DNA from: Octopus sinensis
Taxonomy: Eukaryota
Direction: 5' to 3'
DNA length: 64,000 bases
NCBI RefSeq assembly: GCF_006345805.1
Contig: NC_043006.1
Span: 4,340,001 to 4,404,000, forward strand
The position numbers and the translations under genes are program-made. Position 1 is the stretch's first letter. Each line of letters begins with the position of its first letter. Below, one piece after another: positions 3,629-3,700 of the stretch. The notes beneath the pieces are model-generated. The model was not told where the DNA came from, did no database searches, and worked only from the letters and a program-made list of their open reading frames with translations.

Positions 3629-3700
3629 GGGTTTGTTCAATAATAACCTGAATAAAATCAAACCAGAAACCTTCCAAAACCTGTCCAGTTTAGAAAGTCT
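3629..3700 (+). CDS. 72-nt LRR exon L1: (L)GLFNNNLNKIKPETFQNLSSLES(L)
   Basis: Flanked by ttttatgttccAG and GTaagtt; exactly 72 nt; phase 2-2; fits LxLxxNxLxxIxxxxFxxLxxLxxL. Confidence 0.9.

What the first reader, a model, noticed from the sequence alone, without database searches (positions are those of the whole stretch)
3629..3638. L1 versus R1: all exon differences fall in two ligand-face codons
Seen: ggt ttg ttc (G-L-F) versus aat ttg cac (N-L-H), i.e. 4 substitutions in the first 10 nt, all in amino-acid-changing codons. The other 62 nt are identical. About 150 nt of flanking intron shows only 1 difference by my manual comparison. Established: x positions of xxLxLxx form the concave binding surface and are the hypervariable sites in VLRs and plant LRR receptors. 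Inference: diversifying selection or patch gene conversion.
Basis: partly seen in the sequence, partly recalled or inferred. Interest (0 to 1): 0.75.

Follow-up and report, generated by a model that had tools for sequence, protein, structure and literature searches.

The report
Two-codon difference between duplicated LRR exons
Two copies of one 72-base leucine-rich-repeat exon in an octopus-like genome differ only at two binding-face codons; this fits the familiar fast evolution of such receptor exons, but the two copies may be the two alleles of a single gene, duplicated by an assembly error.

Summary
Exon L1 (3629-3700, +) and exon R1 (58581-58652, -) are 72-nt, same-phase, single-LRR exons. 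They differ at 3630, 3631, 3636 and 3637 only (GGT>AAT, TTC>CAC). These codons are positions 5 and 7 of LxxLxLxxN. The nearest intron differences are at 3599 and 3787.

The exons lie in an inverted repeat: L 1-11392 against R 63228-39628, about 2% substitutions. The L copy stays homologous to the last base before a 100-N scaffold gap. L and R may therefore be alleles kept as a false duplication, not paralogs. Reads are needed to decide.

The excess of exon change is general in this locus:
- L2/R2 differ at 9 of 72 exon sites against about 3% in the flanks.
- A spliceless pseudo-exon pair differs at 0 of 69 sites.
- Young tandem cassettes differ by 17-32% in exons against 3-9% in introns.
- Positions 7 and 5 are the most variable of all positions.
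- pN/pS is about 4.9 at the x positions and 0.37 elsewhere.

Synonymous sites are also several-fold more diverged than introns. A 620-nt identical tract shows that gene conversion acts here. Sequence exchange plus selection fits better than point mutation alone. The window holds no donor.

This is an ordinary kind of LRR evolution in a new place.

The parts
3629..3700 (+). Exon L1: a 72-nt single-LRR exon encoding (L)GLFNNNLNKIKPETFQNLSSLES(L)
   Evidence: ag|...|gtaagt boundaries and an open frame; LRR HMM score 49 bits.
3630..3637 (+). The variable patch: GGTTTGTT in L against AATTTGCA in R (Gly5Asn, Phe7His)
   Evidence: Arm alignment.
58581..58652 (-). Exon R1: the inverted copy of L1, encoding (L)NLHNNNLNKIKPETFQNLSSLES(L)
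1..11392 (+). L arm of the inverted repeat. It carries L1, one pseudo-exon and L2, and it reaches both the window edge and the scaffold gap.
   Evidence: blastn and MAFFT; sequence read directly.
39628..63228 (-). R arm, collinear with L. It carries extra transposable-element insertions and four extra LRR cassettes (three spliced exons, R3-R5, and one pseudo-exon).
11393..11492 (.). Scaffold gap of 100 N, directly after the last homologous base of the L arm
10122..10193 (+). Exon L2 (VLSFNAITEIKTDTFRYLSSLRI)
   Evidence: It shows 9 substitutions against R2.
46292..46363 (-). Exon R2 (ILRFNAITEIKPDTFRYLTRLRI), the counterpart of L2
44070..44141 (-). Exon R3
41805..41876 (-). Exon R4
41015..41086 (-). 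Exon R5
25707..25778 (-). Exon R6
23548..23619 (-). Exon R7, identical to R6
18469..18540 (-). Exon R8: a weaker LRR match, 72 nt, bounded by ag|...|gtatgt
8725..8793 (+). LRR pseudo-exon without splice sites (L copy), used as a control
   Evidence: It shows 0 substitutions against its R copy.
47615..47683 (-). LRR pseudo-exon without splice sites (R copy)
43102..43173 (-). Another LRR pseudo-exon. It has no AG acceptor or GT donor.
23318..23938 (-). A 620-nt tract with no substitutions between the R6 and R7 tandem units, flanked by 5.6% divergence. I read it as a recent gene-conversion tract.

Best explanation
L1 and R1 are two copies of the same single-LRR exon of a fast-evolving, octopus-type extracellular LRR gene. 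The gene is built from 72-nt, same-phase exons, one repeat per exon, and several of these exons are recent tandem cassette duplicates.

The two copies sit in an inverted repeat of about 2% divergence. That repeat is more likely (about 60:40) the second haplotype of one locus, kept and mis-scaffolded next to a gap, than a true inverted paralog.

The difference consists of two dinucleotide replacements that change the two central solvent-facing residues of the beta-strand, positions 5 and 7 of LxxLxLxxN. The most likely origin is one or two short multi-nucleotide events, either a short patch copied from another LRR exon or a complex mutation. Such events persist because variation on the ligand face is tolerated or favoured.

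Shown here: the anatomy, the excess of exon change over intron change, the hypervariability of positions 5 and 7, and gene conversion acting in the locus. Inferred: the selection, the patch origin of this particular difference, and the allele status of the two copies.
For: - Exon structure and LRR identity: Pfam LRR_8, E = 4.5e-55; closest solved structures are IGFALS, TLR13, LRRC15, TLR3, LGR4/5.
- Between the arms, exon change exceeds intron change. L1/R1 is 4/72 against 2/332. L2/R2 is 9/72 against 11/339. Pooled, this is 13/144 against 13/671 (p = 1.3e-4). The spliceless pseudo-exon pair has 0 differences in 69 nt.
- Young cassettes L2, R2, R4 and R5 differ by 17-32% in exons and 3-9% in flanks. 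Variable columns are 29/72 in the exon and 45/422 in the flanks.
- Positions 7 and 5 are the most variable. pN/pS is 4.9 at x positions against 0.37 elsewhere.
- Purely synonymous differences of 0.18-0.63 against flank values of 0.03-0.08 point to sequence exchange, or to old exons within homogenised introns.
- Gene conversion is visible as a 620-nt identical tract around R6/R7, inside units that are otherwise 5.6% diverged.
- Small shared patches exist: R1's cagGAATTTG matches R6/R7, and R2's AAACCAGA matches L1/R1.
- For the haplotig reading: homology runs to the last base before the 100-N gap and does not resume after it. The R contig runs straight through the matching point. Gaps between copies are a listed hallmark of false heterotype duplication (PMC9516828).
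Against: - L1/R1 is a single exon pair with only two events, and dS = 0 carries no information.
- The window holds no donor for AATTTGCAC or GGTTTGTTC.
- Multi-nucleotide substitution clusters also occur in the introns of these arms.
- The cassette pairs are not independent, and each exon has only 23 codons.
- x positions vary among the repeats of any LRR protein, so variability alone does not show selection.
- No expression evidence was found. No near-identical protein appeared in the 5.8-billion-protein search.
- The arms differ by many 1-nt homopolymer-length indels, with 22 extra bases in L against 6 in R, so at least one arm carries consensus noise.
- The many structural differences between the arms also fit an old true duplication.
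Confidence: 0.5

Rival explanations
1. L and R are true inverted paralogs, and four independent point mutations were fixed by positive diversifying selection at the two ligand-face codons after the duplication.
For: All four changes are nonsynonymous and fall in the two most variable positions. pN/pS is above 1 at x positions in young cassettes. The arms differ by several transposable-element indels and by cassette number, as a duplication a few percent old might.
Against: Four fixed point mutations within 8 nt would have to accumulate while only 2 changes occurred in 332 nt of neutral flank. That needs an extreme rate. The changes are two adjacent-base pairs, which looks like multi-nucleotide events. 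Elsewhere in the locus synonymous sites are elevated too. If L is a true copy it is a truncated fragment: no further + strand LRR exons follow the gap, so selection on it is unlikely. The position of the gap favours a haplotig.
Confidence: 0.15
2. Neutral chance. One or two complex multi-nucleotide mutations happened to land in the exon of a weakly constrained or dying gene copy, with no selection and no functional meaning.
For: Nine multi-nucleotide clusters occur among 58 substitution events in 3.4 kb of these arms. About 1.2 events are expected in any 72 nt at that event rate. The x positions and the residue between them span 9 of the first 10 nt of the exon, so a hit there is not very improbable. 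No expression evidence was found.
Against: The second exon pair, L2/R2, shows the same excess (9/72, p = 6e-4), while the pseudo-exon pair shows none. All exons keep open frames and canonical splice sites. The event-level probability is 3e-3.
Confidence: 0.2
3. Assembly artefact. The four bases are consensus or polishing errors in a duplicated, poorly polished region, for example reads from another LRR exon pulled into the consensus.
For: The arms differ by about 30 single-base homopolymer-length indels in 4.5 kb, strongly skewed to one arm. That is typical of residual long-read error. The region is duplicated in the assembly and lies next to a gap.
Against: Long-read consensus errors are mostly indels, not paired substitutions. 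Neither exon has an indel. Both versions give sensible codons. No source of mis-mapped reads exists in the window.
Confidence: 0.1

Closest known systems
Plant R-gene and receptor-like-protein LRR clusters (for example Cf-4/Cf-9, or the coffee SH3-CNL cluster, PMC3113787)
   Same: Hypervariable solvent-exposed x residues of xxLxLxx, Ka/Ks above 1 only at those residues, tandem and inverted paralogs, and gene conversion between copies (here).
   Different: This is an animal (octopod-like) gene. It has one LRR per 72-nt exon, not long LRR exons. No NB-ARC or kinase part was seen. Here introns are much less diverged than exons, synonymous sites included.
Heterotype false duplication, a retained haplotig (Ko et al. 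2022, PMC9516828)
   Same: Two diverged copies lie on one scaffold, an assembly gap sits at the end of one copy, and the copy stays homologous to its last base.
   Different: Read depth, heterozygous k-mers and linked-read discordance, which define the category, could not be tested. The copy is inverted and lies 28 kb from its partner.
MHC-type pattern: the peptide-binding exon is more diverged than its introns, which are homogenised by recombination (my knowledge: Cereb/Hughes 1997, Bergstrom 1998)
   Same: Exon divergence, synonymous sites included, exceeds flanking-intron divergence. Variation is concentrated on ligand-contact residues. This would apply directly if L and R are alleles.
   Different: A different fold and gene family, and no population sample. 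This is a resemblance, not a test.
Genes with one LRR per exon: LGR and glycoprotein-hormone receptors, Slit (my knowledge); Tetrahymena 90-bp LRR exon arrays (PMC6564038)
   Same: Uniform exon length, a single intron phase with a junction codon split between exons, and tandem exon-plus-intron repeat units that expand by unequal crossing-over (here).
   Different: Exons are 72 nt rather than 90 nt. No 7TM, EGF or other defining exon lies in the window. LGR and Slit are conserved genes, whereas this locus has recent cassette duplications and pseudo-exons.
Lamprey VLR loci
   Same: LRR modules in both orientations around a gene, with diversity concentrated on the concave face.
   Different: The modules here are ordinary exons with AG/GT splice sites. 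They are not spliceless donor cassettes used by somatic copy-choice, and nothing points to somatic assembly.

Membership tests
Typical 24-residue extracellular LRR (Pfam LRR_8 class) | The LxxLxLxxNxLxxIxxxxFxxLxx periodicity, scoring above the Pfam gathering threshold | tested here: met
   LRR_8 scored 183.7 bits (cut-off 27) on the joined R exons. PDB matches reach E = 9e-60.
One-LRR-per-exon gene architecture | Each repeat lies in its own exon of constant length, with the same intron phase on both sides | tested here: met
   Ten 72-nt exons have AG and GT boundaries and a split CT|N junction codon; R8 has AT|N instead.
LGR, Slit or TLR membership | A 7TM, EGF/LamG or TIR exon, and LRRNT/LRRCT caps | tested here: inconclusive
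   None was found in the window by ORF listing, tblastn with 26 LRR proteins, or the LRR HMM. The gene runs off the window, so absence here does not decide membership.
Diversifying selection on the LRR ligand face | Differences confined to x positions of xxLxLxx | tested here: met
   In L1/R1 all 4 changes fall in positions 5 and 7. In L2/R2 only 2 of 5 nonsynonymous changes fall at x positions.
Diversifying selection on the LRR ligand face | dN/dS above 1 at x positions and below 1 elsewhere, across paralogs | tested here: inconclusive
   The young cassettes give 4.9 against 0.37. This rests on 6 non-independent pairs and about 3 synonymous sites per pair. Across all eight functional exons the ratio is 0.96 against 0.48.
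Diversifying selection on the LRR ligand face | Excess nonsynonymous polymorphism in population alleles, and site models on orthologs | not testable with these tools
   No reads, population data or orthologous cephalopod loci could be reached. Look-ups failed.
Ectopic (patch) gene conversion | A cluster of differences inside an otherwise identical tract | tested here: met
   Four substitutions lie within 8 nt. There is only 1 other substitution in the 432 non-exon nt of 3283-3786, where about 9 are expected at 2.1%.
Ectopic (patch) gene conversion | An identifiable donor carrying the converted patch | tested here: not met
   AATTTGCAC occurs only in R1. Neither 15-mer has a match with 3 or fewer mismatches at another LRR exon. 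Only the window could be searched.
Ectopic (patch) gene conversion | Independent evidence that conversion acts in the locus | tested here: met
   A 620-nt identical tract around R6/R7 lies within units that are 5.6% diverged.
Heterotype false duplication (haplotig) | An assembly gap between or at the end of the copies, and homology reaching the contig end | tested here: met
   L 11151-11392 matches R 40069-39628 up to the last base before the N run at 11393-11492. There is no homology after the gap.
Heterotype false duplication (haplotig) | Haploid-level read depth and haplotype-specific k-mers on both copies | not testable with these tools
   No read data were available.
VLR-type somatic cassette system | Spliceless donor cassettes around an incomplete germline gene | tested here: not met
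   The functional modules have canonical splice sites. The three spliceless copies look like decayed exons.

The most novel reading that the evidence does not exclude
The locus is an octopod recognition receptor of the immune or chemosensory kind. Its single-LRR exons form a germline diversification system with three features: the number of cassettes differs between haplotypes (one in L against five in R, four spliced plus one pseudo-exon); sequence patches move between LRR exons only; and balancing or diversifying selection acts on the beta-strand face. Because every exon is 72 nt and in the same phase, the exons could also be skipped or combined by splicing. This would be an invertebrate analogue of plant R-gene clusters or of MHC-like allelic lineages.
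Probability: 0.15. Interest if true: 0.6.

Novelty: new member of a known kind. Interest (0 to 1): 0.33.

Why it matters
If the pattern holds genome-wide and in populations, it would point to a lineage-specific, rapidly diversifying LRR receptor family in cephalopods. Very little is known about pathogen or ligand recognition diversity in that group. The locus would also be a clean example of exons that are more diverged than their introns.

There is a practical lesson as well. An apparent paralog pair under 'diversifying selection' may be two alleles duplicated by the assembler. That would inflate estimates of gene-family size and of selection. As it stands the signal is a familiar one, resting on few sites.

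Tried and rejected
The claim that positions 5 and 7 face the concave side rests on established LRR structural knowledge.
- Exact-protein look-ups for the Octopus sinensis LRRC4-like hit and for the window's transposase found nothing. No orthologous locus or second assembly could be compared.
- The protein search with the joined R exons found no close relative. The best hits were 42-47% identical, and the best named one is Octopus sinensis LRRC4-like. The gene seems unannotated.
- Searches for a donor of either patch in the window were negative.
- Searches for LRRNT, LRRCT, TM or TIR exons were negative.
- RNA-editing-derived change, which would show as an A/G bias, was considered and rejected. 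Only 4 of the 13 exon differences between the arms are A/G.
- A fold-back or palindromic-read artefact was rejected. The arms are 28 kb apart and differ structurally.
- A VLR-like system was rejected because the modules have splice sites.

Full report
**What the window is.** The window is AT-rich (about 36% GC) eukaryotic DNA, full of microsatellites and transposon remnants. An intact Tc1/mariner-type transposase ORF at 50909-51853 has its best named relatives in Octopus bimaculoides, at 84-90% identity. The best named hit of the LRR exons is an Octopus sinensis 'LRRC4-like' protein at 47% identity. The source is therefore octopod-like. The exact species and the gene could not be identified, because no near-identical protein is on record.

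**The observation.**
- Exon L1 (3629-3700, +) and exon R1 (58581-58652, -) are each 72 nt and are bounded by ttccag| and |gtaagt.
- The first base of each exon completes a Leu codon whose first two bases (CT) end the previous exon.
- L1 encodes (L)GLFNNNLNKIKPETFQNLSSLES(L) and R1 encodes (L)NLHNNNLNKIKPETFQNLSSLES(L).
- The alignment shows four substitutions, at 3630, 3631, 3636 and 3637. The nearest other differences are at 3599 and 3787.
- In the LxxLxLxxNxL register the changed residues are positions 5 and 7.

**Is it more than chance?**
- Unique sequence of the arms differs at 73 of 3447 sites, or 2.1%.
- As a plain count, 4 changes in 72 nt is only mildly high (p = 0.07). Against the local flank (2/332) it is significant (Fisher p = 0.011).
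- Four substitutions within 8 nt inside the exon has p = 1.5e-4 under uniform placement.
- The changes are two adjacent-base pairs, and such multi-nucleotide clusters also occur in the introns (9 of 58 events). At the event level p is about 3e-3.
- The exon sits in a stretch (3283-3786) with only one non-exon difference, where about nine are expected at the arm-wide rate. I computed this from the list.

**Context: an inverted repeat that ends in a gap.**
- L 1-11392 is collinear, in inverted orientation, with R 63228-39628.
- Large indels separate the arms. Present only in R are 1285 bp at about 59672-60950, the mariner, reverse-transcriptase fragments, long microsatellites, and four extra LRR cassettes. 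Present only in L are about 300 bp at 133-432 and the reverse-transcriptase ORFs at 5026-6628.
- Homology reaches window position 1 on the outer side. On the inner side it reaches the very last base before a 100-N scaffold gap at 11393-11492. It does not resume after the gap. The R contig runs straight through the matching point.
- A copy that stays homologous to its contig end, next to a gap, is a recognised hallmark of a heterotype false duplication, that is, a retained haplotig (PMC9516828).
- The arms also differ by about 30 single-base homopolymer-length indels in 4.5 kb, with 22 extra bases in L against 6 in R. This indicates residual consensus error in at least one arm.
- I judge 'alleles of one locus' somewhat more likely than 'true inverted paralogs', at about 60:40. 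Only reads can settle it. If L is a true copy it is a truncated gene fragment, because no further + strand LRR exons follow the gap.

**The gene.**
- On the minus strand there are eight spliceable 72-nt LRR exons: R1 at 58.6 kb, R2 at 46.3, R3 at 44.1, R4 at 41.8, R5 at 41.0, R6 at 25.7, R7 at 23.5 and R8 at 18.5 kb. There are also two spliceless pseudo-exons, at 47.6 and 43.1 kb.
- The L arm has L1, one pseudo-exon and L2.
- The joined exons score 184 bits on Pfam LRR_8. They resemble IGFALS, TLR13, LRRC15, TLR3 and LGR4/5 ectodomains.
- No cap, transmembrane, TIR or 7TM exon lies in the window.
- L2, R2, R4, R5 and, more distantly, R3 are recent cassette duplicates. Their introns align for at least 250 nt on each side of the exon.

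**Exons diverge faster than introns throughout the locus.**
- Between the arms, L2/R2 differ at 9 of 72 exon sites against 11 of 339 flank sites (p = 0.003). Pooled with L1/R1 this is 13/144 against 13/671 (p = 1.3e-4).
- The spliceless pseudo-exon pair has no difference in 69 nt.
- Among the young cassettes, exon divergence is 17-32% against 3-9% in the flanks. Variable columns are 29/72 in the exon against 45/422 in the flanks. The first 24 nt of the exon reach 35% mean pairwise difference.
- Across the eight distinct functional exons, position 7 carries 7 different residues and position 5 carries 6, the highest of all positions. Positions 3, 8, 10 and 16 follow with 5 each.
- In the young cassettes pN/pS is 4.9 at positions 2, 3, 5, 7 and 8, against 0.37 at the other 18 codons.
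- This is the pattern known from plant R-gene LRRs (PMC3113787).

**Selection on amino acids is not the whole story.**
- Synonymous differences in codons that keep the same amino acid are 0.18-0.63 per site, against 0.03-0.08 in the flanking introns.
- Even the non-x codons have pN = 0.14, above the intron divergence.
- Two readings fit. Either the exons are older than their introns and the introns have been homogenised, or the exons receive patches from diverged LRR exons with which only the exon shares homology.
- Conversion demonstrably acts here. The R6 and R7 tandem units are 5.6% diverged over 573 nt, yet share a 620-nt tract without a single substitution, centred on the exon.
- Small shared patches exist: R1's cagGAATTTG matches R6/R7, and R2's AAACCAGA matches L1/R1. 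They are too short to prove anything.
- The window holds no donor for either full L1 or R1 patch.

**Verdict.** The finding is real and its reading is reasonable, but the L1/R1 pair alone (two events, dS = 0) cannot show selection. The locus as a whole supports exon-focused diversification of the LRR binding face, with sequence exchange contributing. Whether L and R are alleles or paralogs is open, and that changes the wording from polymorphism to divergence. The phenomenon belongs to a well-known kind (plant R genes, VLR concave-face variability, MHC-like exon/intron contrast). It is here seen in an unannotated octopod-type gene with one LRR per exon, an architecture also known from LGR and Slit genes (my knowledge) and, with 90-bp exons, from Tetrahymena LRR arrays (PMC6564038). 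Interest is moderate to low.

Noticed in passing
window 22743-24570 vs 24910-26692; identical tract 23318-23938: Two tandem 2.16-kb units each carry an identical LRR exon (R7, R6). They share a 620-nt tract with no substitutions, flanked by about 5.6% divergence. This is the signature of a recent gene-conversion tract.
   Followed up: yes
window 11393-11492: A 100-N scaffold gap lies exactly where the left arm of the inverted repeat ends. Homology runs to the last base before it and is absent after it.
   Followed up: yes
window 500-5000 vs 57165-63030: The arms differ by about 30 single-base length differences in short homopolymers, with 22 extra bases in L against 6 in R. This looks like residual long-read consensus error in one arm.
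   Followed up: partly
window 29858-33735: A satellite of about eight 491-bp units at 93-100% identity. The last 238 nt (33498-33735) are an inverted copy of part of the unit.
   Followed up: no
window 50909-51853 (+): An intact 314-aa Tc1/mariner-type transposase ORF, present only in the R arm. Its best named relatives are Octopus bimaculoides proteins at 84-90% identity, which places the window in or near octopods.
   Followed up: partly
window 5026-6628 (-), 54465-55155 (-): Reverse-transcriptase-like ORF fragments of non-LTR retroelement type. The first is present only in the L arm and the second only in the R arm.
   Followed up: no
window 8725-8793 (+), 47615-47683 (-), 43102-43173 (-): LRR-coding pseudo-exons that have lost both splice sites. 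The L/R pair is identical over 69 nt, unlike the spliced exons.
   Followed up: yes
window 9452-11392 vs 39628-47038: The L arm has a single cassette (L2). The R arm has four spliced cassettes plus a pseudo-exon (R2, R3, Rps, R4, R5). This is a copy-number difference in LRR exons between the two arms.
   Followed up: partly
window 18469-18540 (-): A further 72-nt LRR exon (YLSNNQIQNYEDGAFLFLPSISN) with ag/gt boundaries. Its junction codon begins with AT rather than CT, so it may be the last repeat before a cap.
   Followed up: partly
window 1-132 and 133-432 vs 63228-63102: SINE-like sequence (tRNA-derived look, '...ggggtcgat...aaaatttcgggcc...') is complete in L and about 300 bp shorter in R. 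A similar element lies at 11540-11600.
   Followed up: no
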